64,000 bases of DNA, taken from the NCBI RefSeq assembly GCF_006345805.1, contig NC_042998.1:189472001-189536000 (forward strand), in the 5' to 3' direction. The stretch's first letter is position 1. Each line of letters starts with the position of its first letter. The position numbers and the translations under genes are program-made. The notes beneath the pieces were generated by a model. The model searched no databases. It saw nothing but the letters and a program-made list of their open reading frames with translations, and was not told the DNA's origin. Shown piece after piece: positions 1 to 62,520 of the stretch. The DNA comes from Octopus sinensis. Taxonomy: Eukaryota.

Positions 1-127
1 TCTCTTACAGCTGTTTCAATTAATACTCAGTGAATTAATTAAATTTGTTAATAATAAACAATTATTAACTTCCCAATCTCCATTTCTTTTTCTTTTTTTG
101 TATGAATATAAACTATATGGTTTTATA

Positions 128-1411: not shown

Positions 1412-1527
1412 TATATATACCTATTATTTTTAAGGAAATCAATTACCCCAAAATATTAGGTATTGAATCAATATTTTCTTAGATGACACCATCCGTTCAT
1501 GAGGCTAACATAACCTCCAATCAAGAA

Positions 1528-1632
1528 CATATATATATATATACACACACACACACATACATATGCATATACATACATATTACATATATATATATACACA
1601 CATATATGCATATATATATATATACACATATA

Positions 1633-1688
<56 letters not shown>

Positions 1689-1790
1689 TATACATATGCA
1701 TATATACACACACACATACATATATAAATATGCATATAAATACATATATATACACATACATGCATGCATACATACATACAAACTGAACCA
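1528..1790. repeat. Compound (TA)n/(CA)n/(TACA)n microsatellite
   Basis: Directly visible; source of several spurious YI/CV-rich ORFs. Confidence 0.95.
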
Positions 1791-1869
1791 CAAAAGAAAC
1801 ATCACACACATACTAAATAGAGACCGGTTTATTAACAGACTGCTGTAGCATTGATTGAAGAGTTCTAAT

Positions 1870-3530: not shown

Positions 3531-3559
3531 AAGATGATATAATAATAATAATAATAATT

Positions 3560-6500: not shown

Positions 6501-7500
6501 CACAAGGAAATTTTAAGAAGGAGAGCTAGTTGATTCAGCAATCCCAGTGCTCAATGGGTATTTATTTCATAATGGTATATTATTTCAAAGGTGGCGAGCT
6601 GGCAGAAACGTTAGCACGCCGGGCGAAATGCGTAGCCGTATTTCGTCTGCCATTATGTTCTGAGTTCAAATTCTGCCGAGGTCGACTTTGCCTTTCATCC
6701 TTTCGGGGTTGATAAATTAAGTACCAGTTATGCATTGGGGTCGATATAATCGACTTAATCCGTTTATCTGACCTTCTTTGTCCTCTCTGTGTTTAGCCCC
6801 TTGTGGGTAGTAAAGAAATAGGTATATTATTTCAAGGATGAAAGGCAAAGTCAACCTCAGCAGAATTTGAATCCAGAATGTAAAGACGAGCAAAATGCTG
6901 CTTAAGTATTTCATCTGTTGTGCTAACAACTCTGCCAGCTCACCACATTAATAATAAAGGATTCAAATTTTGGCACAAGGTCAGTAAGGTTGGAGGAGAG
7001 GGCTAGTTGATTATATCAATCCCAATGCTTATTGACCCCAAAAGGATGAAAGACAAAGTTAACCTTGGTGAAATTTGAACCCAGAATGTAAAATCAAACA
7101 AAATGCTGCTAACCAATTTGCTTGGCATGTTAACAATTCTGCTAGCTGGCTGCATTAATAATAATTTTTTCTACTATAGCCATAAGGCCTGAAATTTGGG
7201 AGTGGGGATAAGTCGATTACATCAATCCACTGTTCAACCAGTACTTATTTTATCGACCCTGAAAGGATAAAAGGTAAAGTTGACCCCGGTGGTATTTGAA
7301 CTCAGATCATAAAAATGGATGAAATGCTGCTAGGCATATTTTCCAGTGTGCTAACGATTCTGCCAGCTCACTACCTTAAATGATGATAATAATAATCCTT
7401 TCTACTAAAGGCACAAGGTCTGAAATTTTGGGGGAGATGGCTAGTTGATTACATCGACCCCAGTGTTTCACCAGTACTTAATTTATCAAACCCAATTATA
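3560..7500. mobile_element. Cluster of about 12 family A SINE copies (mostly minus, head-to-tail, separated by (AAT)n) plus one family B fragment near 5320-5535
   Basis: Repeated GGATGAAAGGCAAAGTCAACCT...GAATTTGAACTCAG...GCCAGCTC units. Plus-strand copies at about 4289-4697 and 6587-6825. Confidence 0.85.
5919..6400. repeat. Tandem duplication, 236-bp period, of a SINE unit
   Basis: CAAATTTTGG recurs at 5921, 6157 and 6393; the two copies differ at about 4 positions. Confidence 0.9.
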
Positions 7501-7506
7501 AACATA

Positions 7507-8070
7507 GGATGGCTTCTCATCTTAACTGATTGGAAGTGTTATCATGTACATTGTTTTGTCTTGGTATAAAAAGTGGGCTACAGCAAATATTCTGCTCAAT
7601 ACCACAGATTTGCTTGTCAGTTGTTTGACTTTAACCAGTTGAGCATATCCCTTAGTGGCTGATGATATATGCATCGCTGATCATGAGCAGAAGTTGTGGG
7701 GGAGTATCATAGTCAAGTGCTGAGAGGGATTCTTTGGGGTTTGGATAATTCACCTCTGGAAACATGGGTGTTTCGCTCAACATCCTTAAACAACCCTTAT
7801 TCAGGGACCCATTTGAGCGGGATGGGCTACTCGACCCGCAGAAAATTCTAACTGGGTCCCACCTGCAAGGTCATGCGCTGTTTATCTTGATATGAGATCA
7901 TCATGTCGCACACATATGGTTGTGATGCATGTGCCTCGTGTACCCTTATCAGACGGGTAGTCATGATGGGTATACTGGGCTTCGTATATTTTACCCGAGT
8001 GTCACTTTGATGGCATGCACTGCTCTCTCACTCAATAATAATAATAATGATAATAATAATAATAATAATA
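7507..8070 (+). mobile_element. Unclassified retroposon-like segment ending in an (AAT)n tail
   Basis: GC-richer ~530-bp block ending GCTCTCTCACTC followed by (AAT)n; no ORF or family motif recognised. Confidence 0.4.
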
Positions 8071-8779
8071 AAGACTTATACAAAAAGCTTATTTTATTTA
8101 GAAAATAAAGGATAATTTCGCAATAAAATAGAGTTTATAAAACAATCGTTGTTACTGAAGATAGCCATCTGAAAATCCATAAGTAAAAAAAAGGTACTCG
8201 TATATTTGTGGGTATATTAATCAATGCATACAATATTATATAATTCCATTACAGCCGATCTTATCAATTTGTCTCGCATTGGATATTATTAGATAACAGG
8301 GTGGTTTTTTAATATACATGCTATTTAGGGGGATGGCACATGTATATATATGTGTGTGTGATATGTACACACACACACACATATATATACATACATATAT
8401 GAAATAGGTACTAGAGCTTCTAAGGATATAAAGTTTATGAATATATATGTATTTTAGGTTGTATATCAAAATTATTTTTTATTAAATTATAAACAAATAA
8501 AAACATGTTCTTTTTTTTAAAAAAGAGAAATTTAATATAAAAATAATCTGAAGTTAGGAAACGTTCCCTGAACAGTGATAGAAAAATAGAGTTTAATCTG
8601 TGGAAGCAATATCGGTCTATAAAATCATGGGCAAGCAGTAATAAACTGTTCTTATATTCTCGTTAGGAAATATATTACAAATGTCAACGGAATTCAGTTT
8701 CCCCACCAAATAACGAGAGAATAATAATGCCCGATTACATCTGAAACACGATTTGTTTTAAATTTTTAAAAAGAGTAGG

Positions 8780-9215
8780 GGCAATCTTTCGTCTCTAGTA
8801 GACCTTTCCGTCGATTTCCGTAAAAATTTTTTTTTTTTTTTACATATGGGCTTGCGGGAACTTTTGAAGTAATGAGAGCGAAAGAGACTAAGAGAAAGCG
8901 ATTGTATGACGAGGGAAGTTCTTTTGAAGTTACCGTGCATTGATGGGCATGTGTGTGTGCGTGCGTGTGTGTGTGTGTGTTTCATGGGGTGTGGGAGACA
9001 GACAGTATGTTGTGTAAGTGAAGTGCTTCTGTTAGTGTGTGTGAAGAGACAGAGAGAGTAATGTGTGAAAGAGAGAGATAACTGAAATTTTTTTACTCGG
9101 TGTATGTGTATATGTATGTATATTACTTCAAAAGTTCCCGCAAGCCCATATGTAAAAAAAAAAAAATTTTTTTACGGAAATCGACGGAAAGGTCTACTAG
9201 AGACGAAAGATCGCC
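8780..9215. mobile_element. MITE with ~93-bp TIRs and 8-bp TSD
   Basis: 8780-8872 is the near-perfect reverse complement of 9122-9215. Flanks AGAGTAGG (8772-8779) and AGAGTGGG (9216-9223). Confidence 0.8.
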
Positions 9216-9461
9216 AGAGTGGGTTGTATAATTAGTTATTTTAAAAAAGTAAAAAAAAAAAAAACGAAAAGAAACATTTTTTTAAACAAACAGCCGTGCC
9301 CTGCACAGACTCATAGTTAAGATTTAAATATACTGGCAAGCTTTCACAAAATCCAATTTATGTATCCTTTGGCAAGAGTGTACATCTCAGCATTTGTAAT
9401 CCAGTGGTTTTCCTTCGTTAGTTGTAACTTTTCTTTAAGACAGATGACATTAAAACTCCCA

Positions 9462-9467
9462 TTTATT
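9462..9467 (-). terminator. Candidate polyadenylation signal (AATAAA) of the Grx-DEP-DUF547 gene
   Basis: TTTATT on plus, about 70 nt downstream of the stop codon. Confidence 0.45.
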
Positions 9468-9536
9468 AAAGCAATAAAAGAATTATTTTCCTATGTAGGG
9501 AGGCTTAAAGTAAACCAGTGTTCAGTGAAGTGTCGG

Positions 9537-10964
9537 CTATGAATTAAGGGACCAGTTGTATGGCAGATACACTATAGTTACTTTACCGTCGTTAATTATT
9601 TTCCTCAAGTTAGATTTTTTCTCTCCTTTTTTCAACACACTGAAAATCCATTCAAGTAACCCCTTATCGGTATTGCTAAAATCTTTCCTGTACCACTTAA
9701 ATATCAGAGACAACTTCACCTGTTTCTTTTCAGCATCAACAACAAAATTTTCGTCACTTTCTAAAAACACATCTGCAGCCTGTTGAAGTTGAACATGAAC
9801 TTCTTCGGCCGAGTAAATGGAAATAGGAGGACAGCCGCTAGCTCCGCACACAAGTGCAAAATGAATGAAAGGGTTTACTTCGGGCATAGCTACCCGAAGG
9901 CGAGGATCAGTCTTTTGGAAAGGTTTCGTTATCATACCCATTCCAGTTTCATTAGCTCTAAGCACACCGTTTTCTATTTCCCCAAGTGAGTATGAATAAC
10001 CACCGATTATGTAACGGGTCTTATTGAAGAAATTGTAGCGTTTCACAATGTTAGTTGGGGGTCCAAAACGAATAATCCCGTGAATCACTAAGGCATTGTA
10101 TATGTTGATAAAAAAGGCAAGTTTCTGATCGTCACTTTCATATCCGAACTGTACTCGCTGTAGTTGAAGAGTCAATTTTTCATATTGTTTGAATTCGTTG
10201 CTGTCTTCAATACTTTTGTAATCGACAGCTTTGCCGTTCGCAGAGAGGTAAGAGTCATATATAGCAGATATTTGGAAACGTAATCTTTTCCCCAGTTTGT
10301 CTAGAGTTGTTGGTTTACAAAATGAAATGGGTTTCGCATTCAATGCCGAGCTGGATAGATCTTCGAGTAGCATATAATATGTATCGCCACGGTTAAGCCA
10401 TCCTGCATTGGAGACTTCACGACAAAAATGATGACTTAGTAAGGCTTTACACAATCTCACAGCTTCCTGATAGTCAGTATTTTTCGTTTTCGTTACCCAG
10501 TCAACAAACTCTTTCTCACTAAACAGCTTTTTAAACTTACATAGACCGCTCCAACGATACGCGATTATGCCACTTTTTTTCAAGTCATTCACCAAATCGA
10601 CATATTCATCCGTCTCACACGTAATAAAATTATCCAATTCAGTTTCTGGGCACGGAATCTCGAGCGCTGTTTCTGATAAAGGGTTGTTTTTGACAAGTTC
10701 AGTTAGTTCTGCACGCCGTTTATCATCTGACATAAGCGCTTTCAGGTCATTGTAGTTGCCGACATGCACATCGTTGAAAAATATCTGCGGGACACTTTTC
10801 TTTTTAAGATTAGCAAGCATCCAGTCTTTACACTGGGTGTGAACGTCCACGTTGACGGTGACGTGAGGTAGTTGAAACTTTTCCAAAAGTCGTTTGGCTT
10901 GAATGCAGTGTACACATCCATTGATGCTATATACAAGTATGCGGCCTTTCAGCTCTGTCACCAT
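9537..10964 (-). CDS. Intronless glutaredoxin-DEP-DUF547 domain protein, 475 aa
   Basis: Uninterrupted ORF. N-terminal Grx fold (VYSINGCVHC...SVPQIFFNDVHVG), DEP-like FSEKEFVDWV...EAVRLCKALL, and DUF547 motifs KLAFFINIYNALVIHG, YSLGEIENGVLR, IHFALVCGASGCPP, LSLIFKWYRKDF. Confidence 0.9.
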   Translation of the reverse strand: MVTELKGRILVYSINGCVHCIQAKRLLEKFQLPHVTVNVDVHTQCKDWMLANLKKKSVPQIFFNDVHVGNYNDLKALMSDDKRRAELTELVKNNPLSETALEIPCPETELDNFITCETDEYVDLVNDLKKSGIIAYRWSGLCKFKKLFSEKEFVDWVTKTKNTDYQEAVRLCKALLSHHFCREVSNAGWLNRGDTYYMLLEDLSSSALNAKPISFCKPTTLDKLGKRLRFQISAIYDSYLSANGKAVDYKSIEDSNEFKQYEKLTLQLQRVQFGYESDDQKLAFFINIYNALVIHGIIRFGPPTNIVKRYNFFNKTRYIIGGYSYSLGEIENGVLRANETGMGMITKPFQKTDPRLRVAMPEVNPFIHFALVCGASGCPPISIYSAEEVHVQLQQAADVFLESDENFVVDAEKKQVKLSLIFKWYRKDFSNTDKGLLEWIFSVLKKGEKKSNLRKIINDGKVTIVYLPYNWSLNS

Positions 10965-11091
10965 CTTAGCAGACTAACTCAACAAGCAGAGCTCAGCTGC
11001 TTTGTGAAGGGGAGATCACTCCGTTTGACTATTGCCAAAGTGGAAGTTGACACTGTCCATACAAAGGTGTGTCGCTGTTTACGTTTACAAT
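10965..11091. promoter_or_regulatory. Putative compact bidirectional promoter / 5' UTR region
   Basis: 127 bp between two divergent ATGs. ETS-like GGAAGT at 11042-11047. YY1-like AAGATGG (minus, 10961-10967) and AATATGGC (11089-11096) overlap the two start codons. No TATA box seen. Confidence 0.7.
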
Positions 11092-47484
<36,393 letters not shown>

Positions 47485-49331: not shown

Positions 49332-49508
49332 TCAGCTTTCACTGTTTTGTACCTCAGTCTCTTTTGGGTGCCGGAATTCTTCCCAAGGATGTTCTGGTTT
49401 GTCAAATCCAACTGACTTCAACCATTTTGGATAGAATTGCATGAAATTCTTGAAGGATTCTTTAAAATAGTTGGTATTGCAATATGATTCAACTGCATTT
49501 TTCTGTTC
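49332..49508 (-). CDS. PTCD1: PTCD1 terminal coding exon
   Basis: tcccag acceptor; HPWEEF; TGA at 49334-49332. Confidence 0.88.
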   Translation of the reverse strand, partial: EQKNAVESYCNTNYFKESFKNFMQFYPKWLKSVGFDKPEHPWEEFRHPKETEVQNSES

Positions 49509-50868
49509 CTGGGATGGACACAAAAGGAAAAAGAAAGAAAAATGTAATTTGAAGTAATCACACAATAAAACTGGAACAATTAAGTTTTCTGCTATTTTAT
49601 GTAAGTGAATTTAAATTATAAGAAAATAAATTGGAGATGAAAAAATATGGTTTAATATTGATTTCAGTTTTCATTTTTTAACCTTTTTTGGTTTTGTTTA
49701 TTGTAACTATATGTAGCAGGTGTGTGTATATCATCATCATCTTCGTCATTTAATGATTGCTTTCCATGGGTTGGATGGTTTGACCGAGGACTGGCGAGCC
49801 AGAAGGCTGCACCAAGCTCCAATCTGATCTGGCAAAGTTTCTACAGGTGGATGCCCTTCCTAATGCCAACCACTCCGAGAGTGTAGTGGGTGCTTTTATG
49901 TGCCACCGGGACGAGGACCAGTCAGGCGGTACTGGCAATGACCATGCTCAAAAAGTGTTTTTTACATGGCACCAGCATGGGAGCCAGTCTGGCAGCACTG
50001 GCAATGACCATGCTAAAATCTTGTTTTTCACGTGCCAGTAAGGCGATGCTGGCAACAATCATGGTTGAATGGTGCTTTTTACATGCCACTGGCACAGGAG
50101 CCAGTCAGCAGCCCTGGCTTGGATGGTGCTTTTAACGTTCCACTGGCATGAGTGCCAATCAGGTGGTACTGTCATCAGCCACGTCAGCGATTTTGATTTC
50201 ACTTGCCTCAACAGGTCTTCGCAAACAAAGTTTATTGTCCAATGAATGAAGGGTACTTATAAGTGGGCTAGTTATATACCATTGGCATAGGACACGGGTT
50301 ATGGTCTCACTTGGCTTGTTGAGTCTTCTCAAGCACAGCATATCTCCAAAGGTCTCAGTCACTAGTCATTGCCTCAGTGAGACTCAATGTTCGAAGGTCG
50401 TGCTTCACCACCTCATCCCAGGTCTTCCTGGGTCAACCTCTTCCACAGGTTCCCTCAACTGCTAGGATCCGTTCGCTACACATGACCATACCAGTGCAGT
50501 CGTCTCTCTTGCACACTACATCTGATACTTCTTAAGGCCAACTTTTCTCTCAGGACGCTTACACTGTTGTGTGTGCAATATGTCAGGGAGCCTGGGTATA
50601 CTTTCCTTGTAGACTCCAAGCAATTGACACCAGCAACCAGGTGAAAAGAGGGGAAATTCAAACTCACTTATTAACACACAAATATATATATATATATATA
50701 TATAATAATAAATATTAGGGAATGAATCCAAAATTACAGGGAAAAATCAGATTGTCGGTAGCAGACATGAAACATTTGTAGTGGCGGTTTATTTAATTTA
50801 TATTAAAATTTTATGTATTGATTAAGTCTTTCCTTGTTTGGTTTTAAAATAGTGGTTTTGTCTCGAAT

Positions 50869-50906
<38 letters not shown>

Positions 50907-51244
50907 GATGATGATGATGACACACACACATGATAAACTTACCAAATCTGTTGGTTAGTCATGGGGCTAGTAGAAGCCACTCAAAGTACCAACCCAAAAC
51001 CATGTCACTGGGTGGTTGCGAAGTGAACTTTTTAACCTACAACCATACCTAAATATATATATATATATATATATAATTTTTCTGATGGCCGAATAACTGA
51101 AGAGATGGCAGCATGGATTCCCACCCCGACATCCGAAACTCGGAGTTTTATCATGGCTACTGAATAATTGTCACATATTACATTTACAGATAAATTCCTC
51201 TCTTTACATAATATTGAGGTCTCTTTCATTCTTTTGTTGTCTTA

Positions 51245-51286
<42 letters not shown>

Positions 51287-54200
51287 CACCAGAAGCAATA
51301 AATTACAAGTACTCAATACAAATAATACATAATTACTGAATTTCTAGTACTCAAAGTTACTTGTTTCTGACCACCAGCTGGTAAACTGAGCCTGGTTTTC
51401 TTTAAATATCCACTATCTGAATATTTTTTTGAAATGGAAGTTTGAAGAAAACGTTTATCCTTATGTCAATGAAATGTGCAAAAATGGTTGCTTGAAGCTC
51501 ATACTTTGGATTTCATTTCTGGTTCTCATGGTAACGTCATAAACATCATAAACTCAATATAAATGAAGTCATGAAACTGCATTGCTGTTTAAGCAAGTCT
51601 TTTAATGATTTTAGTCATTGGACTACAACCATGAGGGGAAACTGTTTTTACTCATTTTATCAGACTTGTTGTTTAAAATTAAGAGTCCGTGTCAGTGACA
51701 CGTAAAAGCACCAACCGATCGTGGCCGTTTGCCAGCCTCCTCTGGCCCCTGTACCGGTGGCACGTAAAAAGCACCCACTACACTCACAGAGTGGTTGGCA
51801 TTAGGCAGGGCATCAAGCTGTAGAAACACTGCCAGATCAGACTGGAGCCTGGTGCAGCCTCCTGGCTTCCCAGACCCTGGTCGAACCGTCCAACCCATGC
51901 TAGCATGGAAAACGGACGTTAAACGATGATGATGATTACTATTTTTCCATCTCTATCATTAATAATGAAATGTGAACAATAATGCCTTTATCCTAAAGAA
52001 ATAATTTCGTCATATGCTTCCTTATATTTCTTCCTCTTACTCTTATAAATTTACTAATTTGAAGACGTAGCAGTGTGAACTCAACTACATGGTTCTGGGT
52101 TCATTCCTACTGTGTGGCAAGTGTCTTCTACTATAGCCTTGAGCCAACCAAAGCCTTGTGAGTAGATTTGGGAGACAGAAACTGAAAGAAGTCCATCGTA
52201 TGTATGTGTGTGTTTGTCCCCCACCACTGCTTGACAAGAGGTGTTAGTGTGTTTATGTCCCTGTAACTTAGTGGTTCGGCAAAAGAGACCAATAGAATAA
52301 GTACTAGGCTAAAAAGTAAGTCCTGGGGTCGATTTCATCATCATCATCATCGTTTAATGTCCGTTTTCCGTGGTAGCATGGGTTGGACGGTTCGACTGGG
52401 GTCTGGGAAGACAGAAGGCTGCACCAGGCCCCAGTCTGATCTGGCAATGTTTCTACAGCTGGATGCCCTTCCTAACGCCAACCACTCCGAGAGTGTAGTG
52501 GGTGCTTTTTATGTGCCAGGGGAGGTTCGACTAAAACCCCTCAAGGTGGTGTTCCAACATGACCCTCAATCAAATGATTGAAACAAGTAAAAGAATAAAA
52601 GAAAGAATAATGTTCAATCGACTGCTTTGTACCGAAGATATCCAATGAAACTGAAATAGCTGTATGAGAATGTTAACGGCTGATTAAAAGAAAGAAAATT
52701 TAATCAAATTAATTGATATATTTTTTATTTCTACTTCTAAAGGTAAAAATCACCCTATCTCAAACAGGCAAGACTATTCTCTCTCGTCATAAGAGGCGAA
52801 TCAACTGAGAGATTCACATTTATTGACTGGGTTAGGATTTACCAGAGTGATGTCCCTTAGGAGAGTCAGCTCCCTTCTACGTCACGAATTTACAATGGTG
52901 TAAATAAGTACACACTGAACGCAGTCCTCGGCTCCCTACATATATGTAAAGCAGGATGATCGTGGTTGGAACGACTTTGTTCTTATGTCTATTCAATGAG
53001 GAATGACTTTGGCTAAACAACGACACTACAGACTGCGAGCCAACGAAGCAATCTCTACGTAGCCAGTCAACCAGTAGACAAGACCTCTGTCACACTTCAT
53101 CACCTTACAAAAAAATGTGCGGTACAGATTACATTGTCTCAGTAAAAGACTTGAAGGTCATGGCTCGAGTGCCTTTCATCATTGGTTTATTTGCCTTTTC
53201 CCTCTCATGATTCATAAGAACAGAATAAAGTTTAGAAATCACATTGACTATATTCTTGAAGGCAATACCCCAGCATTACTATAATCCACTAAGTGAACTA
53301 ACCATCATCATTTAACGTCCGTTTTCCATGCTGGCATGGGTTGGACGGTTTGACGGAAAACTGGTAAGTTGCACCAGGTTCCAATCTGGTTTGGCAAGGT
53401 ATCTACAGCTAGATGCCCTTCCTAACACCAACCACTCCAACACTGTAGTGGGTGCCTTTTACACTGTACCAGCACAGGTGTCAGTTATGGGACACTGGCA
53501 TTGGCCATGACTATAATTTCACTTGGCTTGGCAGGTGTTGGTCATTTGTCATTGCCTCTCTGAGGCCCAATACAAAAAAACAAAAAATAATGAATAAAGA
53601 ATTGTTATTCACATACCATCCCAAGAATTTTCTTCCGAGCACTGGCTATATGGTTTTCAATGTGTTGGATGAATGCAGTGTTAGGTTTTAGGCCCCATTT
53701 TGGCATCATTTCTAGAAGTTCAAGCTTGTATTTAAAATCCATATTGCTCTTGTACATTAACAGACCAAATATTTCAATATTTGGTTCCATACCAAGTTCC
53801 TAAAATAAGATAAAAGCTTAAAAAATAAATTAAATTAAAATGCAACCTGTTTGACTTGTAAACACTAGGCCATGTCAGTACCTGTATATATGTATATAAA
53901 GTTAATCCAAACATGAAAACACAACAACGCGAAGACGTGGAACAAATATAGTATTATAGGACGCTCAGGAAGGAAGGGAAGAAGGAGGGTTTAACGTTTC
54001 GAGCGGAGCTCTTCATCGGAAACATAGGAGAAGGGAAGACAGAGGAAAAAAAATCGCCAATGGTACACACGTGGTCACATATATATATACTGTTTTATGT
54101 CAAGTTATATATAAAAGAATTTAACATTGAAGTGAGGGATTACTCAAGTACATATTTAAAAACTTCGATGTGAGCCAGTCTGATGGAGAGTAGCAGGCCA

Positions 54201-54456
54201 AAACTTTGAAGTCACTGTCAACCCTCTTGTAAAAAATTGGATAATAAAACGAATGGTTTACACCTGGTAGCTTACTTGTAAAACACGGTCACTTTCCCAA
54301 TGATTGTTATGTGTATGGTTAATTGATATAATTAATAAATTCTCGTATATTCCATCTTTTGTCTTTCATTTGCCATATATATATGTGTGTGTATATATTA
54401 TTTAAAATAGTTTGATTCAGCCCCATGCAACTGATCCAGGCTGTTTTCACAGTTAT

Positions 54457-54495
<39 letters not shown>

Positions 54496-56825
54496 GGCAT
54501 GTGTAAAAACATTTGAGCGAGGTCGTTGCCAGTACCGCCTGATTGGCCCCTGTGCCGGTAGCACGTAAAAGCACCCACTACACTCTCGGAGTGATTGGCA
54601 TTAGGAAGGGCATCCAGCTGTAGAAACTCTGCCAGATCAAGATTGGAATCTGGTGCAGCCATCTGGTTCGCCAGTCCTCAGTCAAATCGTCCAACCCATG
54701 CTAGCATTGAAAGCGGATGTTAAACGATGATGATGATGTATATATATATATATATATAAATAACAGTATTATTCTGGAACTGTTAGGATTGTACTGAAGA
54801 TATAATGTAATCAGAAAGTGGAGGTTTAATAGAATCAAACAAAAAGCTTTGCAGTATTTGTTCCAGATGTTTTATGTTCTGAGTTCAAATCTCATCTTTG
54901 TCTTTCATCAATCTGGGATGAGATAAATCACCAGTCCAGGGCAATGATTACTGGAATCATGTGTGTGCTGGGCAAAATTCTGGCTCTTTACATTCTGCAG
55001 GTAGGAATAAGGCACTTGTCTTACATAGTATGTAGTTAATATGATGATGTCTTATATAAAAAAAACACAACAGAAATAGCATCTATTGTTGTGTCTGGGG
55101 AGAGTCATTTTCTTTTTGTGCCTTATAATGTAACACACTCAGAGTCAAAACTATTGAAAAAGTTGCAAGACGCAATGAAAATTTTAGGAAAATAAAAATA
55201 AGAAAAAAGTGGAAATTTTACCAGTGAGTGTGTTACATTATAAGGCACAAAAAGAAAATGACTCTCTCCAGACACAACAAAATATGCTTCAACACACGAA
55301 CTCATATAAAGAATCTTGCAAACCAAATCCAAAAAGAAATAGCATCATCATCATTTAATGTTTGTTTTCCACCCTGGCATGGGTAGGACATCTCCTACAA
55401 TAATTCTATGACAAGCACTTGTCAAGGAAACCACTATGGGTCTTTCATGAGTCTGATGATGCAAGGAAGATGGTAATGGGATGAGCCAATGTAGGTTACA
55501 CAGGACTGGCACTCCCTAATTTTTTCCACAAGCCCATGGAAGGATTTGAGTGCAGTATGGCCTGTCAATGAAACAACAATTGAACATACATTCTCTCTAC
55601 AGTATTGAAATGTAATCACTTCTACATGGCATTGTTTTAACAAATGATGGATACTTTAGATAGTGTAGTTCTAAACATGCTATCTCTGTTTGAAGTAATT
55701 ACTCACTGTGAAGTCTTGGCTTCAAAATTATAAGTAATAATAAGTAAACTTTACTAAAAGTATTGAGTACATTTATCTCCTTTTTGTAAATTCCAATTCA
55801 CCTCTCTCTATGTGCGTGCATACATATATACATATATGCATGTATGTATCAGCTGAGCAAGTTTCTGCTGGTCGCTTGACACACTGGGAATAACTAAAAT
55901 TCCCTTCTTATCACAACATATCATCATCATCATCATTTAACGCCCGTTTTCCATGCTAGCATGGGTTGGACGGTTCGACCGGGGTCTGGGAAGCCAGGAG
56001 GCTGCACCAGGCTCCAATCTGATCTGGAAGAGTTTCTACAGCTGGATGCCCTTCTTAATGCCAACCACTCCGTGAGTGTAGTGGGTGCTTTTTACATACT
56101 ACCGGCACAGGTGCTGGGGGAGGCTGGCAACGGCCACGATTGGTTGGTGCTTTTTACGTGCCACTGGCATGGAAGCCAGTCAAGGCAGTGCTGGCATCGG
56201 CCACGTTTGGATGGTGCTTATTAAAAAAAGATAACACTAAATAAATTCATTATATTTGGAAAAGATGTGATGGTCACAGCTGGAACCTTCTTTATCATTT
56301 ACCGAATCAGGACTGACATGGACTTAAACAACAAATGTTTAACAAGATCCCAGTCAACTTGATTTTTATATTAAATTTGGCTTTATTCTCAATAAAGAGT
56401 CTTCCCATCAGTAATTATTCCATTGTTATTCTTAAACTTGCTTTAAAATAATAACCTTATAATAACACTAGCAGTATCACCCGGCGTTGCTCGGGTTTGT
56501 TTCGACCCTTTAGTATTGGAATTTTTGAAAAGTAAAAATTTAGCATTATGTAGCTTGTTATTCTCTTTAAGTGAACATTTTTCTGGTTGAAATACACCGA
56601 AAAATGGTGACACAGCAGTAAAAAAATCGTAAAAATTAGGGATTTTCATAGAAAAAAAAAGCACCTTTTTGATGTTAAAATGGTCTGATTTGAATTTTTT
56701 CTTCTATAGAAGGAAGAGCAACTCTTCTATCATACTCTCAATTTTGGTCAACTTGCGCCGCAGGGGCTTCGAAGAGATAGTGTTAGTTGAAGGCTACCAA
56801 ACCTGCCATACACAGACAACTTCAG

Positions 56826-56860
<35 letters not shown>

Positions 56861-57572
56861 TTTATATATTTATACACACACAACCAGGAATCCCTGATAA
56901 ATTGCATGCACACAATTCACTCTCCATAAGTTTAACAAGAATAGCCATTATCCTTACATCAATGTTACGAAGGAGTTCCTTTGCTTCATTCAGTTTTATA
57001 CAGCCCATTGCTAAACAGCCAAAAGTTCTTTGGTTAGGATGTAAATTATCTTCCCCAATTTTGCGCAGAACATCCTGAAATATAAAAAAAAAAAACACAT
57101 ATAAGAGTCTGAACAAAAATAAAACTCTTACTACTTACTACAAATTACATGGTTTTCTTGGGATTTCAAACAGAGCACATCATCATCATCATCATCATTA
57201 TCATCATATGTGCAGATGATAAGTCTTGTCTAACCTCTGATAACATGCAAAAAGCTGATGTAAAAATGATCATAATGATGAAATTGAATCAACACTGTCC
57301 ATGTCCCATGTTGGTATGGGTTGGGTGGTTTCATAGGATCCGATGGGCCCAAGGACTGCAATGTGGTCCAGTATTTTTTTTGGCATGGTATCTATGGTTG
57401 GATGCCCTGCCTAATGCCAATCACTTTACAGCATGTACCGGGTGCTTTTTCCATAATGTCAGCAACTAAAGAGGTTGCCAAGCAGTTTGTAAGATTATGA
57501 ACCTCAAGGAAGGACTTTGTTAGGAGAATAAAATATAGAGAGGGATAAAGTATAAGAGAAAAGAGCTGGAAG

Positions 57573-57610
<38 letters not shown>

Positions 57611-57652
57611 TATATATATATATAGATTTATATATTTATATATATATATATA

Positions 57653-57695
<43 letters not shown>

Positions 57696-57717
57696 TATAT
57701 ATATATATATATATATA

Positions 57718-57791
<74 letters not shown>

Positions 57792-57799
57792 ATATATAT

Positions 57800-57837
<38 letters not shown>

Positions 57838-57855
57838 ATATATATATATATATAT

Positions 57856-57940
<85 letters not shown>

Positions 57941-60900
57941 ATTATATATATATATAGCAATATTAAAAATGGAGGGGATCAAGAGGTGGTTCATCAACTT
58001 TTAGACATTATATTATGTTAACTTATTTATTTATTTACTAAACTGATAATTACAATAATATACATAAATATAACATGTTATGCTTTACATATAAGATATA
58101 AAATATAGTAGTATATAAGGATACCAGTAATTATTATAAAATAACAAACATACTGGTATCCTTATATATTACTATATTTTATATCTTATATGTAAAGAGC
58201 ATAACATGTTATATGTATGTATATTATTGTAATTATCAGTTTAGTAAATATTAAATAAGTTAACATAATATAATGTCTAAAAGTTGATGAACCACCTATT
58301 GATCCCCTTTATTTTCTTATTGCTATATAAATTAATGGTAAAATATCTCTTTACCTTCACCCATTTAGTACACTAGGTAATGTAATTGCAATGCAATAAA
58401 AAACACTTGTGTATTAATAACTGGGTATTCTACCAGCAGTATATTGGATAGATATTATCCCTTAGTGGGTTGGATTCACAACCTCTAACTTTCTTGGAGT
58501 TATATATATATATATATATATCACCACCATTATCTGCCATGCTAGCATGGAAAAAGTGGGTATAAAAACAATGGTGATGCGGCATAATGATTTTCTGAAC
58601 ATCATCATCATCTAACGTCCGTTTTCCATGCTAGCATGGGTTGGACGGTTTGACCGGGGATCTGGGAAGCCAGGAGGCTGCACCAGGTTCCAGTCTGATC
58701 TGGCAGGGTTTCTACAGCTGAATGCCCTTCCTAACGCCAACCACTCCATGAGTGTAGTGGGTGCTTTCTACGTGCCACCGACACAGGGGCCAGCCAAGGT
58801 GGCGCTGGCATCGGCCTCATTTGGATGGTGCATTTTACGTGCCACCGGCACGGGTATCACAACTACAATTTCCATTTGATTTTTATTTTGATGTTGATGT
58901 ACTTAACTCAATAAGTCTCCTCAAGCACAGTAGGTCTCCCCATGATCCAAGGTAAGTACAGCAGGCCGTCCTGCGATCCAAGGTACTCTGAATGGGCTGG
59001 GGCTGGTTGTGTGAAGCTGGTGTGGGATACAGCCATAAACTCACTTTATTTGTCGGGTCTTCAAACAACATTCATATATATTAAATATATATTTGTGTAT
59101 ATGCGATCAGGGAAGTGCAAAGCCATGTGGATGGGCGTTGGGTTCATGATTGTAAGATCATGGGTACAGTTCCTGGTTTGGCGAGTTTAGGAACTTGCTT
59201 TAGAGGAGCATCATTTGAAGAAGATAGAAAGGAGGAATTGGAGAAGTTTTTGCATGTGGCAATGTGTATCAATGTGATTGTGAGGAAAGTTTTCTCTTGA
59301 GTGTTCAATGTAGAGATGGAGATGGTAGAATATGCAAAATTTTGTTAGAGGTAACTTATGACCTGGGAATGGTAGACTTCACAGGAAAAATGAAACATAC
59401 TGAGAGATGTTATAATGCAGGCTTGGGATCTTTTCGGTTTGACCGGCAGTTTTTTAATATAATTTCCACGTAACTAAACACTTTTAAACTTCGTATACTG
59501 GTAGAATGTGTTTATAAAACATCTTTTTCTCTTGGCTTTATTGAGAAAATTCTATAGTTTGTAAGATATTTGTTGTCTTTTTTCTTCAATTTCAACCAAT
59601 CAATGACGTCTATTGAGGTGAAAACATTCTGTGCCGTATGAATATGTCCCTCGTTTAAGAAACAGATTGGGTTTATTTACATTTCCGAAAACAGATTGAA
59701 ATGCAATAGATCGATACTAGGGTCATAATTATGGGTGACAATTTCATATGACACCACTAGAAAAAACTGGCATTCAAACCGAAAAGATCCCAGGCTTGTA
59801 CTATACACAAGGACTTGAAAAGAATATGGGCTTTAAGAACACACATGCTCACACACAATTGCATGCAGAATGATTGGCAAACATAAAACAAACCCTTGCA
59901 TCCTGATACCGTAAGGACCGATTTCTTCTCCTGATTATCATGTTATAGAAATCAATGTCTGGTCGCACCCCCAAACTTTTCATGTAGTCCAGAATTTCAA
60001 CTTCTGTGCTATTGTTTAATGGCAGGCAGTCAATTATTTGAGTGAAAGTTAAAATATTCGGCTTGATTTTGTTTTTCTCCATATCTTTAAGAATACTGAA
60101 AGGTCCGCCTATCAGAGCAAGTCGATTATCTGGATAAGTAAGGTCAAGACTCTTTGCCAACTCTGACTGATCAAAATAGTTTGGTTCTTTTTCAATCAAA
60201 TTGCTAATTGGTTGGACCATTTGATCTGCTTTAGAATGATTTACACTGCTCACTGGAATTTCACAATCTTCATTTATTTTGTCTGAAATTTCAAAGAAAA
60301 TTTGTCAAAATTCTAAAATAAGATATTAGACTTGAATAACTGAATTAGACCTATTTCTTTCAATGCTCTTTTGCTAAATATTTCTTAATGTTAGTATGAA
60401 GTAAGGTTGATTTTGAAGATTTCAACATTTGTGTATTGTTGAAGAAATTGTTTTTAAATTATATACAGTTTTTTTTCTTTTAAACATTTAAGTGTGAAAT
60501 AGAACTCTCTTTTACTTGTTTCAGTCATTTGACTGCGGCCATGCTGGTGCACCGCCTTTAGTCGAGCAAATTGACCCTGAGACTTATTCTTTGTAAGCCC
60601 AGTACTTATTCTATCGGTCTCTTTTGCCGAACCGCTAAGTGACGGGGGACGTAAACACACCAGCATTGGTTGTCAAGCAATGCTAGGGGGACAAACACAT
60701 ACATATATATATATATACATATATACGACAGGCTTCTTTCAGTTTCCGTCTACCAAATTCACTCACAAGGCATTGGTCAGCCCGGGGCTATAGCAGAAGA
60801 CACTTGCCCAAGGTGCCACGCAGTGGGACTGAACCCGGAACCATGTGGTTGGTTAGCAAGCTACTTACCACACAGCCACTCCTGTGCCTAGAAGTGGAAT

Positions 60901-62520
60901 GTTTGTTAACCAAACACTAGAGTATTCAGAGTTATGCACTGGCCTTCAGATGTATACATGCAGATGCTTAAGATTTAAACTCATAGCTATATGAATTTTA
61001 TAGTTCATCAATTTAACCTTACAATCATTATGTAAAATAATAGAACTATCCAACATACATTTAAAAATAAATGGTCAAAACAAGTACCACATGAGTTTCT
61101 ATTTTATTAGGTACATTTACATCCATGAGACACAAATGTTAATGTAGCTAATAAAGCTATATTAACATCTATTGATTTTTTGCCTCTCTTTTACTCTTTT
61201 ACTTGTTTCAGTCATTTGACTGTGGCCATGCTGGAGCACCGCCTTTAGTCGAGCAAATCGACCCCAGGACTTATTCTTTGTAAGCCCAGTACTTATTCTA
61301 TCGGTCTCTTTTGCCGAACCACTAAGTTACAGTGACGTAAAAACACCAGCATCGGTTGTCAAGTGATGTTGGGGGGACAAACACAGAAACACAAACATAT
61401 ATATATTTACATATATACGATGGGCTTCTTTCAGTTTCTATCTACCAAATCCATTCACAAGACTTTGGTTGGCCCGAAGCTATAGTAGAAGGCACTTGCC
61501 CAAGGTGCCATGCAGTGGGACTGAACCCGGAACCATGTGGTTTGTAAGCAAGCTACTTACCACACAGCCACTCCTACGCCTATGTCTATTTGTTAATAAG
61601 AAAATATACTCAACATCTGTGAAATCATTTATTTATGCTACCTTGATCCACAGTGTTGCTGTATAATTTTAAGTGTTGTCTTTATTTGAACAGATCTCAA
61701 CTAGTTTGGCAGAAGTACAGATCATTATCATGAGCCAAAAGACACTCAACCTGTTAGAAATGGTTGGCAAATCTCCCAGCTTGAAAAGGGAGACTCATTT
61801 GATAATACAGTCCTAGATGCACATTGTCTGAGAGAAAGATGGGCTAGAATACATTTGATCATAAAACTGCTCAGTCAGGGCTGACCTGGGGTTGAACTAC
61901 AACACTGCATTCATTTCACTTTGATGTTCAGACTCTTTCACATTTTAATATTTCAATAAGGCTTGACATCATCATCATCATTTAACGTATGTTTTCCATG
62001 CTAGCAAGGGTTGGATGGTTCAACCGGGTCTGGGAAGCCAGGAGGCTGCACCAGGCTCCAGTCTGATCTGGCAGTGTTTCTACAGCTGGATGCCCTTCCT
62101 AACGCCAACCACTCCGTGAGTGTAGCGGGTGCTTTTTACGTGCCACTGGCACAGGTGCCAGAGGAGGCTGGCAACGGCCATGATCGGTTGGTGCTTTTTA
62201 CGTGTCACCAGCACAGAAGCCAGTAAAGGTGGCACTATTGTTTTTATAAATTGATTTGATGTTGCTGATGAATGATCTGAACATCTGTACTGGTATAGAA
62301 AAACTTCTGAAAAAGTGTTCATAAGCAAAATTCAAATTAAGAAAGAGAAAATACCTTTATCTACTGAGGTTGACTTATTATGGATTGGTGGTGCAGTGTA
62401 ATCAGGGAAATTCACAACATTACTAGTGGTACCAAACCCTGAATCCCTGATTGTACGGATTAATAAATTGTAGAGTGGAAGATCTGGTTTAATTTTCAGA
62501 GAGCCCAATTGTTTCCAAAC
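49332..62520 (-). CDS. PTCD1: PTCD1, mitochondrial pentatricopeptide-repeat protein, 3' part: complement(join(49332-49508, 53617-53799, 56958-57074, 59894-60282, 62355-62520)); 5' exons outside window
   Basis: [34 protein letters not shown]...[33 protein letters not shown] and F..FY.KWL...EHPWEEF match PTCD1 segments (VW...PS..SYNLLL..RDCG, LLGG, PNLQTFCNLAIGC, HPWQKF). GT-AG introns, phases consistent. Confidence 0.88.
49731..50625 (-). mobile_element. Longest family C copy: RTE reverse-transcriptase C-terminus, tandem-repeat 3' UTR and (GAT)n tail
   Basis: [25 protein letters not shown] followed by a frameshifted [14 protein letters not shown]-type segment, then GTGCC..GGCAC monomers and the family C tail. 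Confidence 0.85.
51093..51151 (+). ncRNA. Type I hammerhead-ribozyme-like motif in a probable Penelope-like fragment
   Basis: ATAA-CTGAAGA-GATG...CATC-C-GAA-ACT(CGG)AGT-T-TTAT. Confidence 0.5.
52770..53030 (+). mobile_element. Old SINE fragment, possibly Nin-domain type
   Basis: GTCATAAGAGGCGAATCAA resembles the recalled Nin-domain GTCGTAAGAGGCGACTAA; ends GGCTAAACAACGACA. Confidence 0.35.
53617..53799 (-). CDS. PTCD1: PTCD1 exon
   Basis: attttag acceptor, GTATGT donor; 61 codons. Confidence 0.85.
53989..54023 (-). ncRNA. Minimal hammerhead-ribozyme-like motif of Penelope-like-element type
   Basis: Minus: GTTT-CCGATGA-A-GAGC(TCC)GCTC-GAA-ACGT-T-AAAC. Confidence 0.55.
55086..55280. repeat. 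Inverted repeat, 56-bp arms (1 mismatch), 83-bp spacer; MITE-like
   Basis: 55086-55141 versus 55225-55280. Confidence 0.85.
56468..56860 (-). mobile_element. Non-autonomous Helitron, same family as 19417-19790
   Basis: TC start with expanded (TA)n, CCCGAGCAACGCCGGG hairpin, CTAG end, A|T insertion site. Confidence 0.85.
56958..57074 (-). CDS. PTCD1: PTCD1 exon
   Basis: tttcag acceptor, GTAAGG donor; 39 codons. Confidence 0.9.
57577..57951. repeat. Interrupted (TA)n tract of about 375 bp
   Basis: Directly visible. Confidence 0.95.
57952..58329. mobile_element. Foldback element: ~178-bp inverted arms with a 21-nt spacer, in TA context
   Basis: 57952-58129 pairs with 58151-58329 with scattered mismatches and small indels. 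Confidence 0.85.
59894..60282 (-). CDS. PTCD1: PTCD1 exon
   Basis: tttcag acceptor, GTTTGT donor; PPR-like motifs. Confidence 0.88.
60504..60890 (-). mobile_element. Family B SINE, full length
   Basis: As above. Confidence 0.9.
61185..61582 (-). mobile_element. Family B SINE, full length
   Basis: As above. Confidence 0.9.
62355..62520 (-). CDS. PTCD1: PTCD1 exon (VWKQ...SVDK; not in the ORF track)
   Basis: T-rich cgtag acceptor, GTATTT donor; phase 1 joins to AC to give Asp. Confidence 0.85.

What the first reader, a model, noticed from the sequence alone, without database searches (positions are those of the whole stretch)
9537..11109. Intronless Grx-DEP-DUF547 gene head-to-head with TVP23: candidate retrogene using a neighbour's promoter
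Seen: a 1428-nt single-exon ORF in a locus where the two other genes have 77-389-nt internal exons and multi-kb introns; its ATG is 127 bp from the TVP23 ATG on the opposite strand. Inference: a retrocopy landed just upstream of TVP23 and survived on that promoter's divergent transcription. The intact ORF argues for selection. No poly(A) remnant or TSD was found, so any such event would be old.
Basis: partly seen in the sequence, partly recalled or inferred. Interest (0 to 1): 0.7.

Follow-up and report, generated by a model that had tools for sequence, protein, structure and literature searches.

The report
Octopus retrogene beside the TVP23 promoter
An octopus gene for an uncharacterised glutaredoxin-type protein has lost all nine ancestral introns and sits 127 bp head-to-head with the Golgi gene TVP23, which fits an old processed-mRNA copy that replaced its parent and probably uses TVP23's promoter; this kind of event is already known.

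Summary
Window 9537-10964 (-) is an intact 475-aa single-exon CDS (Grx + DEP + DUF547). Its ATG lies 127 bp from the ATG of TVP23 (11092, + strand). The window is Octopus sinensis chromosome CM016860.1.

- Orthologues in a scallop, an abalone and a nemertean all have 10 coding exons, with 9 introns at identical positions and phases. Three Octopus species, one Octopus-like contig and Argonauta have none.
- In 18 non-cephalopod species the gene and TVP23 lie on different contigs.

TVP23 is the resident gene. Its 7-exon structure, including the 18-nt first exon, and its tail-to-tail PPR neighbour are shared with abalone. In abalone and a nemertean its start already faces another gene 235-336 bp away.

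No multi-exon parent appears in octopod proteomes, so this looks like retrogene replacement. The gene is under purifying selection (dN/dS 0.09-0.20) but evolved 2.5-3 times faster than in other molluscs. The 127-bp spacer is constrained: 75% identity between Octopus and Argonauta, against 57.5% at third codon positions.

Promoter sharing is inferred, not shown. No poly(A) remnant or target-site duplications (TSDs) were found, and squid and Nautilus could not be checked. This is a new member of a known kind (compare amphioxus SYCP1).

The parts
9537..10964 (-). Single-exon CDS (475 aa plus stop) of the Grx-DEP-DUF547 (class IV glutaredoxin-like) gene; O. sinensis orthologue of O. bimaculoides LOC106884313
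   Evidence: ORF. Pfam domains. 94% identical to the O. bimaculoides protein. The gene call in the source assembly spans exactly the CDS length. dN/dS is 0.09-0.20.
10761..10940 (-). Glutaredoxin domain (aa 9-68). The active site is CVHC, where orthologues have CPHC.
   Evidence: Pfam PF00462, E=4.7e-13. PDB glutaredoxin sequence hits. Foldseek TM-score up to 0.86 to E. coli Grx3. Motif comparison.
10371..10556 (-). DEP domain (aa 137-198)
   Evidence: Pfam PF00610 at 31.5 bits against a 32.7-bit cut-off. Orthologues carry precomputed PF00610 hits. DEPTOR DEP matches by sequence and fold.
9762..10136 (-). DUF547 domain (aa 277-401)
   Evidence: Pfam PF04784, E=4.6e-38. No solved-structure relative by sequence, and none among the best 50 whole-chain fold matches listed.
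9462..9467 (-). Candidate AATAAA polyadenylation signal, about 70 nt after the stop codon (inferred)
   Evidence: Read directly from the sequence. Not validated by transcripts.
10965..11091 (.). 127-bp spacer between the two start codons: the putative shared bidirectional promoter plus both 5' UTRs
   Evidence: O. sinensis vs O. bimaculoides identity is 126/127. Octopus vs Argonauta identity is 75%, against 57.5% at third codon positions and about 51% in the 3' flank. The 29 nt next to the TVP23 ATG are 100% identical.
11092..11109 (+). TVP23 coding exon 1 (MAATSS) followed by a GTGAGT donor
   Evidence: The same 18-nt (Haliotis) and 15-nt (Tubulanus) first coding exon, phase 0, is found in outgroups. 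Gene calls in O. sinensis, O. bimaculoides and Argonauta start here.
37747..47484 (+). TVP23 coding exons 2-7: 37747-37823, 40109-40263, 42441-42520, 44576-44701, 45777-45905, 47401-47484
   Evidence: tblastn with Argonauta TVP23. The exact splice model gives a 222-aa protein, with AG/GT at every junction. Exon sizes match Haliotis and Tubulanus.
11181..12152 (.). Three colinear conserved non-coding blocks (11181-11203, 11727-11753, 12083-12152) in the first 1 kb of TVP23 intron 1, which is also upstream of the Grx gene
   Evidence: Sensitive blastn of Octopus against Argonauta: E=0.007, 5.5e-4 and 3e-7, in colinear order.
49359..62517 (-). Pentatricopeptide-repeat (PPR) gene, tail-to-tail with TVP23. 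This is the same arrangement as in Haliotis and marks the TVP23 locus as ancestral.
   Evidence: Pfam PPR_3/PPR_2 on the exon at 59849-60253. Five colinear tblastn hits from fragments of the Haliotis PPR gene. Haliotis gene order.

Best explanation
The octopod Grx-DEP-DUF547 gene is a retrogene that replaced its parent. SHOWN: the ancestral lophotrochozoan gene had 10 coding exons. SHOWN: octopods have one uninterrupted CDS at a new genomic address. INFERRED: in an ancestor of Octopus and Argonauta, a spliced mRNA of that gene was reverse-transcribed and inserted about 100 bp upstream of, and divergent to, the ancestral first exon of TVP23. INFERRED: TVP23's compact housekeeping-type promoter, which faces other genes at 235-336 bp in abalone and a nemertean, supplied divergent transcription, so the promoterless copy was expressed at once. 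INFERRED from absence in proteomes: the multi-exon parent was later lost, leaving the retrocopy as the only gene of this family. SHOWN: since then the copy has been under purifying selection. SHOWN: it had 2.5-3 times more amino-acid change than other mollusc orthologues, including CPHC to CVHC/CLHC in the glutaredoxin active site. SHOWN: the 127-bp spacer is conserved above the neutral level.
For: Intron loss. Exact spliced alignments give 9 introns at identical positions and phases in Mizuhopecten, Haliotis and Tubulanus. tblastn gives one uninterrupted HSP in O. bimaculoides and Argonauta. In O. sinensis the gene span equals the CDS. A further Octopus-like genomic contig is colinear with the window.

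Internal control. TVP23, 127 bp away, keeps all 6 ancestral coding introns.

New address. The neighbours of the Haliotis and Tubulanus orthologues are Arf, EF-hand, eIF2D and WD40 genes, not TVP23. In 18 non-cephalopod species the contig holding this gene differs in length from the contig holding TVP23. In Argonauta it is the same contig.

TVP23 is the resident gene. Its 18-nt first exon is ancestral. TVP23-PPR tail-to-tail microsynteny is shared with Haliotis. In Haliotis the head-to-head slot is held by a PLDc_2 gene at 336 bp, and in Tubulanus by another gene at 235 bp.

Only one copy. Among the best 120 hits, the only proteins named as cephalopod are one cluster for Octopus and one protein for Argonauta. 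Any parent would be expected to score above the 414-bit floor of that list.

Function retained. dN/dS is 0.09-0.20. The AlphaFold2 model is confident, with pLDDT 86.8.

Constraint on the spacer.

Precedents. AmphiSYCP1 is a retrogene replacement with a co-opted bidirectional promoter (PMC5803294). [quoted passage not shown]
Against: No poly(A) tract, target-site duplications or remnant of the parental UTR were found. With dS above 1 between Octopus and Argonauta these would be erased. Non-L1 routes also exist (LTR-mediated retroposition, PMC5131818, listed, abstract only).

No octopod genome could be searched at the DNA level, so an unannotated or decayed parent is not excluded. The fate of the ancestral locus is unknown.

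No transcript, CAGE or expression data were available, so shared promoter use, TSS positions and possible non-coding 5' exons are untested.

Cephalopod genomes are heavily rearranged (background knowledge), so relocation alone is weak evidence.

No squid, cuttlefish, Vampyroteuthis or Nautilus locus could be examined.

The Argonauta gene names suggest homology-based annotation, so its TVP23 gene call may not be independent. The conservation of exon 1 and its donor site is independent.
Confidence: 0.72

Rival explanations
1. In-situ intron loss followed by rearrangement. The ancestral gene lost all nine introns at its original locus, by homologous recombination with a cDNA of its own mRNA. A separate chromosomal rearrangement later placed it next to TVP23.
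For: It also explains the total intron loss and the single copy. It needs no loss of a parent gene. Cephalopod genomes are extensively rearranged (background knowledge). No poly(A) tract or TSDs were found.
Against: It needs two independent events, with a breakpoint falling within about 100 bp of both start codons without damaging either gene. TVP23's own microsynteny with the PPR gene is intact on the other side. Simultaneous loss of all 9 introns by gene conversion is rarer than partial, 3'-biased loss (background knowledge). None of the Haliotis or Tubulanus neighbours of the orthologue was seen in the window: the list of ORFs of 90 aa or more shows none, and no targeted search for them was run.
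Confidence: 0.15
2. The retrogene is real but has its own promoter. The gene arose by retroposition but is transcribed from its own or a de novo promoter, or from upstream non-coding exons inside TVP23 intron 1. The proximity to TVP23 would then be incidental to its expression.
For: Three colinear conserved non-coding blocks lie 90-1,060 bp upstream of the gene inside TVP23 intron 1. They could be 5' UTR exons or separate regulatory elements. AmphiSYCP1 evolved a de novo multi-exon 5' UTR. With only 127 bp between the ATGs, the two 5' UTRs must be very short or must overlap.
Against: The head-to-head spacing is kept at 116-127 bp across a divergence with dS above 1, and the spacer is constrained. 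The TVP23 start region is head-to-head with other genes in two outgroups. Retrocopies close to a divergent gene are reported to be co-expressed with it.
Confidence: 0.2
3. Artefact or foreign origin. The ORF would be assembly contamination, a horizontally acquired bacterial DUF547 gene, or an unspliced fragment of a larger gene.
For: DUF547 is also common in bacteria (background knowledge). Intronless genes in animal assemblies can be contaminants.
Against: The same arrangement, with the same flanks, occurs in independent assemblies of O. sinensis, O. bimaculoides and Argonauta and in a Logan contig from another octopus. O. vulgaris has the gene too, but only its protein was seen in the cluster. 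All named hits among the best 120 are animals with the Grx-DEP-DUF547 architecture, and the protein joins them in the tree. GC3 is 0.40, against 0.39 GC for the whole window. The N- and C-termini align with full-length orthologues, and an in-frame stop lies 12 nt upstream.
Confidence: 0.01

Closest known systems
[quoted passage not shown]
   Same: A single coding exon replaces a gene that is multi-exon in other animals. The parent is lost. The copy lies head-to-head with an unrelated resident gene whose promoter is proposed to be shared. The event is old and is shared by related species.
   Different: In amphioxus, promoter sharing, 5' UTR isoforms and expression were shown experimentally. Here they are inferred from sequence alone. 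The gene family, the host gene (TVP23) and the phylum all differ. Whether non-coding 5' exons evolved here is unknown.
Mammalian retrocopies that recruit bidirectional promoters of upstream genes (Carelli et al. 2016, PMC4772013)
   Same: A retrocopy lies within 2 kb, head-to-head, of a protein-coding gene. The pre-existing bidirectional promoter is the proposed source of its expression.
   Different: The mammalian cases are mostly young, were made by L1 (poly(A) tract and TSDs still visible) and coexist with their parents. The octopod gene is old, shows no insertion scars and appears to be the only copy.
Class IV glutaredoxin-like proteins (Grx-DEP-DUF547) of plants, and animal zgc:152951-type proteins
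   Same: The same three-domain order, with a CxxC motif in the N-terminal glutaredoxin module.
   Different: The plant proteins are about 630 aa, and the family is biochemically uncharacterised (PMC13621322). The octopod protein has CVHC/CLHC in place of the CPHC found in the other 11 orthologues shown in the alignment (CPFC in Actinia). It also lacks the 46-66-aa basic N-terminal extension predicted for many mollusc orthologues.

Membership tests
Retrogene (processed retrocopy) | Lacks all introns that the parental or orthologous gene has within the copied region | tested here: met
   There are 0 CDS introns in O. sinensis, O. bimaculoides, Argonauta and one more octopus contig. There are 9 introns at identical positions and phases in a scallop, an abalone and a nemertean.
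Retrogene (processed retrocopy) | Located at a genomic site unrelated to the ancestral locus | tested here: met
   Orthologues in Haliotis, Mizuhopecten and Tubulanus are not near TVP23. The two genes lie on contigs of different length in 18 non-cephalopod species. The TVP23-PPR block is ancestral. The ancestral locus in octopus itself could not be inspected.
Retrogene (processed retrocopy) | 3' poly(A) tract remnant | tested here: not met
   No A-rich tract follows the candidate AATAAA in Octopus or Argonauta. This is expected to be erased at dS above 1. It is not required for LTR-mediated retroposition (PMC5131818, abstract seen).
Retrogene (processed retrocopy) | Flanking target-site duplications | tested here: inconclusive
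   No dedicated TSD scan was run. The flanks show no obvious direct repeat by eye. The 3' flank cannot be aligned between Octopus and Argonauta, so the insertion boundaries cannot be defined.
Retrogene replacement (orphan retrogene) | The multi-exon parent is absent from the same genome and the retrocopy is the sole family member | tested here: inconclusive
   Among the best 120 of 897 hits, the only proteins named as cephalopod are one Octopus cluster (O. bimaculoides, O. sinensis, O. vulgaris) and one Argonauta protein. Genome-level tblastn was not possible with these tools.
Retrogene replacement (orphan retrogene) | The retrocopy is maintained by purifying selection | tested here: met
   Nei-Gojobori dN/dS is 0.09-0.20 in all six pairwise comparisons among four octopod sequences.
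Bidirectional (head-to-head) promoter gene pair | Divergent genes whose starts lie less than 1 kb apart | tested here: met
   127 bp separate the ATGs in O. sinensis and O. bimaculoides, and 116 bp in Argonauta.
Bidirectional (head-to-head) promoter gene pair | The arrangement and the spacer sequence are conserved across species | tested here: met
   Spacer identity is 75% between Octopus and Argonauta, against 57.5% at third codon positions. A 29-nt tract is 100% conserved.
Bidirectional (head-to-head) promoter gene pair | Both TSSs map to the shared region and the two genes are co-expressed | not testable with these tools
   No octopus transcript contigs were found for this gene. The Logan contigs L009 and L010 end in microsatellites and are colinear with the genome, so they are probably genomic.
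Class IV glutaredoxin-like (Grx-DEP-DUF547) | N-terminal Grx module with CxxC, central DEP, C-terminal DUF547 | tested here: met
   Pfam hits are in that order. DEP is 1.2 bits under the gathering score but is supported by DEPTOR matches and by PF00610 hits on orthologues. The CVHC motif is at residues 17-20.

The most novel reading that the evidence does not exclude
The retrogene replacement may also have been a functional shift. The new copy encodes only the short isoform, lacking the basic N-terminal extension (possibly an organelle-targeting or membrane-anchor sequence) predicted in many mollusc orthologues. It changed the otherwise conserved glutaredoxin active site from CPHC to CVHC/CLHC. 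It evolved 2.5-3 times faster than other mollusc orthologues. It also became transcriptionally coupled to the Golgi trafficking gene TVP23. Under this reading, octopods rewired the localisation, redox chemistry and regulation of an ancient and still uncharacterised Grx-DEP-DUF547 protein.
Probability: 0.15. Interest if true: 0.5.

Novelty: new member of a known kind. Interest (0 to 1): 0.35.

Why it matters
This is a clean, datable case of retrogene replacement in a cephalopod. The ancestral exon structure is known exactly, the host locus is shown to be ancestral, and the neighbouring gene serves as an internal control for intron retention. It adds a lophotrochozoan example to the few documented cases in which a promoterless retrocopy survived beside a divergent housekeeping promoter and then took over from its parent. 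It gives a compact, testable 127-bp candidate bidirectional promoter for octopus functional genomics. It also flags lineage-specific change in a conserved but uncharacterised redox protein family. It does not reveal a new mechanism.

Tried and rejected
1. A 60-aa two-exon TVP23 query returned only short fragments of 105 aa or fewer and no named octopus protein. A 164-aa query was needed.

2. I tried to date the event outside octopods. P0003 (Logan contigs, 48% identity) is sister to octopods in a neighbour-joining tree. It has CRHC at the active site and an equally fast rate. Its organism could not be identified:
- The SRR accessions appear in no paper.
- The sample differs from that of the squid-like TVP23 contig.
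- It shares no more rare states with octopods than two unrelated sequences do.
- Its contigs may be transcripts; whether they are transcript or genomic could not be settled, so they say nothing about introns.

3. The Logan contigs for an Octopus-like protein (L009, L010) were examined for UTR structure. They end in microsatellites and are colinear with the genome, so they are probably genomic and uninformative about transcription.

4. The Haliotis head-to-head partner of TVP23 (a PLDc_2 gene) was sought in the window by tblastn and not found.

5. Similarity between Octopus and Haliotis just upstream of the TVP23 ATG is only marginal. The shuffle test gives p of about 0.02, and 59 of 2,502 background windows score as high. 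I do not rely on it.

6. There is no CpG island at the spacer: CpG observed/expected is 0.48-0.58.

7. The last contig look-up, for chiton TVP23, was not on record.

8. A fold search of the AlphaFold2 model gave only Grx and DEP matches among the 50 listed, so it gave no functional lead for DUF547.
Full report
OBSERVATION

The minus strand of window 9537-10964 carries an uninterrupted 1428-nt ORF of 475 aa. Pfam finds three domains in order: Glutaredoxin (residues 9-68, E=4.7e-13), DEP (137-198, 31.5 bits, just under the 32.7-bit cut-off) and DUF547 (277-401, E=4.6e-38). An in-frame TAG lies 12 nt upstream of the ATG. Both termini align with the termini of full-length orthologues. The ORF is therefore a complete CDS, not one exon of a larger coding region.

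On the + strand the TVP23 start codon is at 11092. Exon 1 is 18 nt (MAATSS) and is followed by GTGAGT. Exactly 127 bp (10965-11091) separate the two start codons. An exact protein look-up identifies the window as Octopus sinensis chromosome CM016860.1 (GCA_006345805.1).

NEIGHBOURS

TVP23 has 7 coding exons: 11092-11109, 37747-37823, 40109-40263, 42441-42520, 44576-44701, 45777-45905 and 47401-47484. Every junction is AG/GT, the protein is 222 aa, and intron 1 is 26,637 bp. A pentatricopeptide-repeat (PPR) gene lies tail-to-tail with it on the minus strand at about 49.4-62.5 kb. The region 1-9536 holds only transposon debris, such as a mariner-type transposase remnant at 534-1338.

IS THE INTRONLESS STATE DERIVED?

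The family is metazoan-wide: the search returned 897 hits, and the list runs from Trichoplax and cnidarians to fish zgc:152951. I fetched genomic loci and made exact spliced alignments.
- Mizuhopecten (gene spans 12.7 kb), Haliotis (13.7 kb) and Tubulanus (2.45 kb) each have 10 coding exons. Their 9 introns are at the same codon positions and phases. Five internal exons have identical lengths in all three species: 74, 198, 94, 134 and 144 nt.
- O. sinensis, O. bimaculoides and Argonauta hians have a gene span equal to the CDS.
- A Logan contig from a further Octopus-like species is colinear with the window.
- TVP23, 127 bp away, keeps all six ancestral coding introns with near-identical exon sizes. 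Haliotis has 18/74/155/80/126/129/51 nt and Tubulanus has 15/77/155/80/129/129/63 nt. The intron loss is therefore specific to this gene and not a property of the region.

IS THE ADDRESS DERIVED?

No TVP23 lies within 10 kb of the orthologue in scallop, abalone or nemertean. Their neighbours are Arf-like, EF-hand, eIF2D and WD40 genes.

I compared the 'longest contig' values for the two families. The genes sit on different contigs or chromosomes in 18 non-cephalopod species: Haliotis, Tubulanus, Lineus, Gigantopelta, Littorina, Babylonia, Patella, Mactra, Lottia, Aplysia, Capitella, Saccoglossus, Priapulus, Dimorphilus, Asterias, Acanthaster, Physella and Glandiceps. In Argonauta they sit on the same 30.17-Mb contig.

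The TVP23 locus itself is ancestral.
- The 18-nt first coding exon is shared with Haliotis, and Tubulanus has a 15-nt one.
- The convergent PPR neighbour is shared with Haliotis. Five colinear tblastn hits link the two PPR genes.
- In Haliotis the head-to-head position is held by a PLDc_2 gene 336 bp away. In Tubulanus it is held by an unrelated 125-aa gene 235 bp away.

TVP23's start region thus sits in a divergent configuration in distant lineages. That is the kind of site where a promoterless insert can be transcribed.

PARENT COPY

In the ranked hit list the only proteins named as cephalopod are one Octopus cluster (O. bimaculoides, O. sinensis, O. vulgaris and one unnamed Logan sequence) and one Argonauta protein. 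The next hits are all at 48% identity or lower. A retained multi-exon parent would be expected to score well above the 414-bit floor of the list. The gene therefore appears to be single-copy, which is retrogene replacement. This rests on annotated proteomes only. I could not search the assemblies at the DNA level.

SELECTION AND RATE

Pairwise Nei-Gojobori dN/dS among four octopod sequences is 0.09-0.20. dS is about 1.1-1.6 to Argonauta.

Tajima relative-rate tests give 92-120 octopus-specific changes against 30-49 changes in Haliotis, Mizuhopecten, Lottia or Mercenaria. Chi-square values are 20-49 with four different outgroups.

The glutaredoxin active site is CPHC in the other orthologues shown, except Actinia, which has CPFC. 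It is CVHC in Octopus and CLHC in Argonauta.

Many mollusc orthologues are predicted with a 46-66-aa basic N-terminal extension before an internal Met-Glu-Leu. The octopod gene starts at the position of that internal Met.

An AlphaFold2 model is confident (pLDDT 86.8, pTM 0.82). Its only PDB fold matches are to glutaredoxins and DEPTOR DEP domains. DUF547 has no solved relative by sequence and none among the fold matches listed. The family corresponds to the 'class IV' glutaredoxin-like proteins of plants, which remain uncharacterised (PMC13621322).

THE SPACER

In blastn between Octopus and Argonauta, the only unique alignable block in 64 kb is 9538-11126. This is the CDS, the spacer, and TVP23 exon 1 with its donor site. 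The block stops at the stop codon.
- Spacer identity is 75%, against 57.5% at third codon positions and about 51% in the 3' flank.
- The 29 nt adjoining the TVP23 ATG, which contain a tandem GTTTAC, are 100% identical.
- O. sinensis and O. bimaculoides differ at 1 of 127 positions.
- Three colinear conserved blocks lie within the first 1 kb of TVP23 intron 1.
- There is no CpG island at the spacer.

This pattern fits a constrained, compact bidirectional promoter with short or overlapping 5' UTRs. No TSS or expression data were obtainable.

INSERTION SCARS

No poly(A) remnant or obvious flanking repeats were found. This is expected at this divergence. Retroposition by non-L1 routes is also documented (PMC5131818, abstract seen).

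INTERPRETATION

The best explanation (confidence about 0.72) is RNA-mediated origin by retroposition next to the TVP23 promoter, before the Octopus-Argonauta split, followed by loss of the parent. The rivals are:
- In-situ, cDNA-mediated loss of all introns plus a precise rearrangement (about 0.15).
- A true retrogene that uses its own promoter or non-coding 5' exons (about 0.2; this overlaps the main hypothesis on origin).
- Artefact or horizontal transfer (about 0.01; excluded).

COMPARISON WITH KNOWN CASES

The closest precedent is amphioxus SYCP1, a single-exon retrogene that replaced its parent and co-opted the bidirectional promoter of CHIC (PMC5803294). [quoted passage not shown] The octopod gene is a new member of this known kind, in a new phylum and a new gene family.

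LIMITS

The timing outside Octopoda is open. A Logan sequence cluster (P0003) is sister to octopods in a neighbour-joining tree, but its organism and gene structure could not be established.

VERDICT

The promoter-sharing step is still inferential. Interest is moderate to low at 0.35: this is a well-documented instance of a known evolutionary mechanism, with a side lead on lineage-specific change in an uncharacterised redox protein.

Noticed in passing
window 11110-37746: TVP23 intron 1 is 26,637 bp in Octopus, against 591 bp in Haliotis and 519 bp in Tubulanus. It separates an 18-nt first coding exon from the rest of the gene. It is filled with repeats, including a reverse-transcriptase zinc-binding (zf-RVT) fragment at 14447-14851.
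   Followed up: partly
window 11063-11091: A 29-nt tract directly upstream of the TVP23 ATG (…GGTGTGTCGCTGTTTACGTTTACAAT, with a tandem GTTTAC) is 100% identical between Octopus and Argonauta although dS is above 1. A similar string abuts the TVP23 ATG in Haliotis, but that similarity is only marginal (p of about 0.02).
   Followed up: partly
window 11181-11203, 11727-11753, 12083-12152: Three colinear conserved non-coding blocks between Octopus and Argonauta lie inside TVP23 intron 1, upstream of the Grx gene. They could be regulatory elements or non-coding 5' exons.
   Followed up: no
window 10905-10916 (residues 17-20): The glutaredoxin active site is CVHC in Octopus and CLHC in Argonauta. 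It is CPHC in the other animal orthologues aligned, except Actinia, which has CPFC. The unidentified P0003 has CRHC.
   Followed up: partly
window 10965-10976, and orthologues P0005, P0015, P0017, P0020, P0021: Many mollusc orthologues are predicted with a 46-66-aa basic N-terminal extension (few acidic residues) ahead of an internal Met-Glu-Leu start. The octopod gene lacks it and has an in-frame stop 12 nt upstream. The retrogene therefore encodes only the short isoform.
   Followed up: partly
L009 1780-1793 (Logan SRR11869390, unnamed Octopus-like species): In this species the TAG stop is replaced by TCG, so the protein is extended at its C-terminus (…NSSPTLH) to 484 aa. The rest of the locus, including TVP23 exon 1, is colinear with the window.
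   Followed up: no
window 49359-62517 (-) and L011 17563-25064: A multi-exon PPR gene is convergent with TVP23 in both Octopus and Haliotis. This is conserved microsynteny across mollusc classes, despite extensive genome rearrangement in cephalopods.
   Followed up: yes
L011 5310-9665 and L012 8785-9766: TVP23 is head-to-head with a PLDc_2 gene at 336 bp in Haliotis, and with an unrelated 125-aa gene at 235 bp in Tubulanus. The PLDc_2 gene was not found in the octopus window.
   Followed up: partly
window 13632-13798, 17271-17428, 20680-20844, 26056-26219 and more than 20 further sites: An element of about 150 nt, SINE-like in length and copy number, occurs in dozens of copies on both strands of the window. 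It matches several copies in the Argonauta locus at 70-75% identity.
   Followed up: no
window 534-1338: A degraded mariner-type transposase (Pfam Transposase_1, E=1.9e-22) lies about 8 kb downstream of the Grx gene.
   Followed up: no
L007, L008 (Logan SRR24189504, SRR27666058): A cluster of 14 sequences (P0003, 481 aa, 48% identity) is sister to octopods in a neighbour-joining tree and evolves equally fast. Its organism is unknown. If it is a decapodiform cephalopod, the event could predate the split between octopods and decapodiforms.
   Followed up: partly
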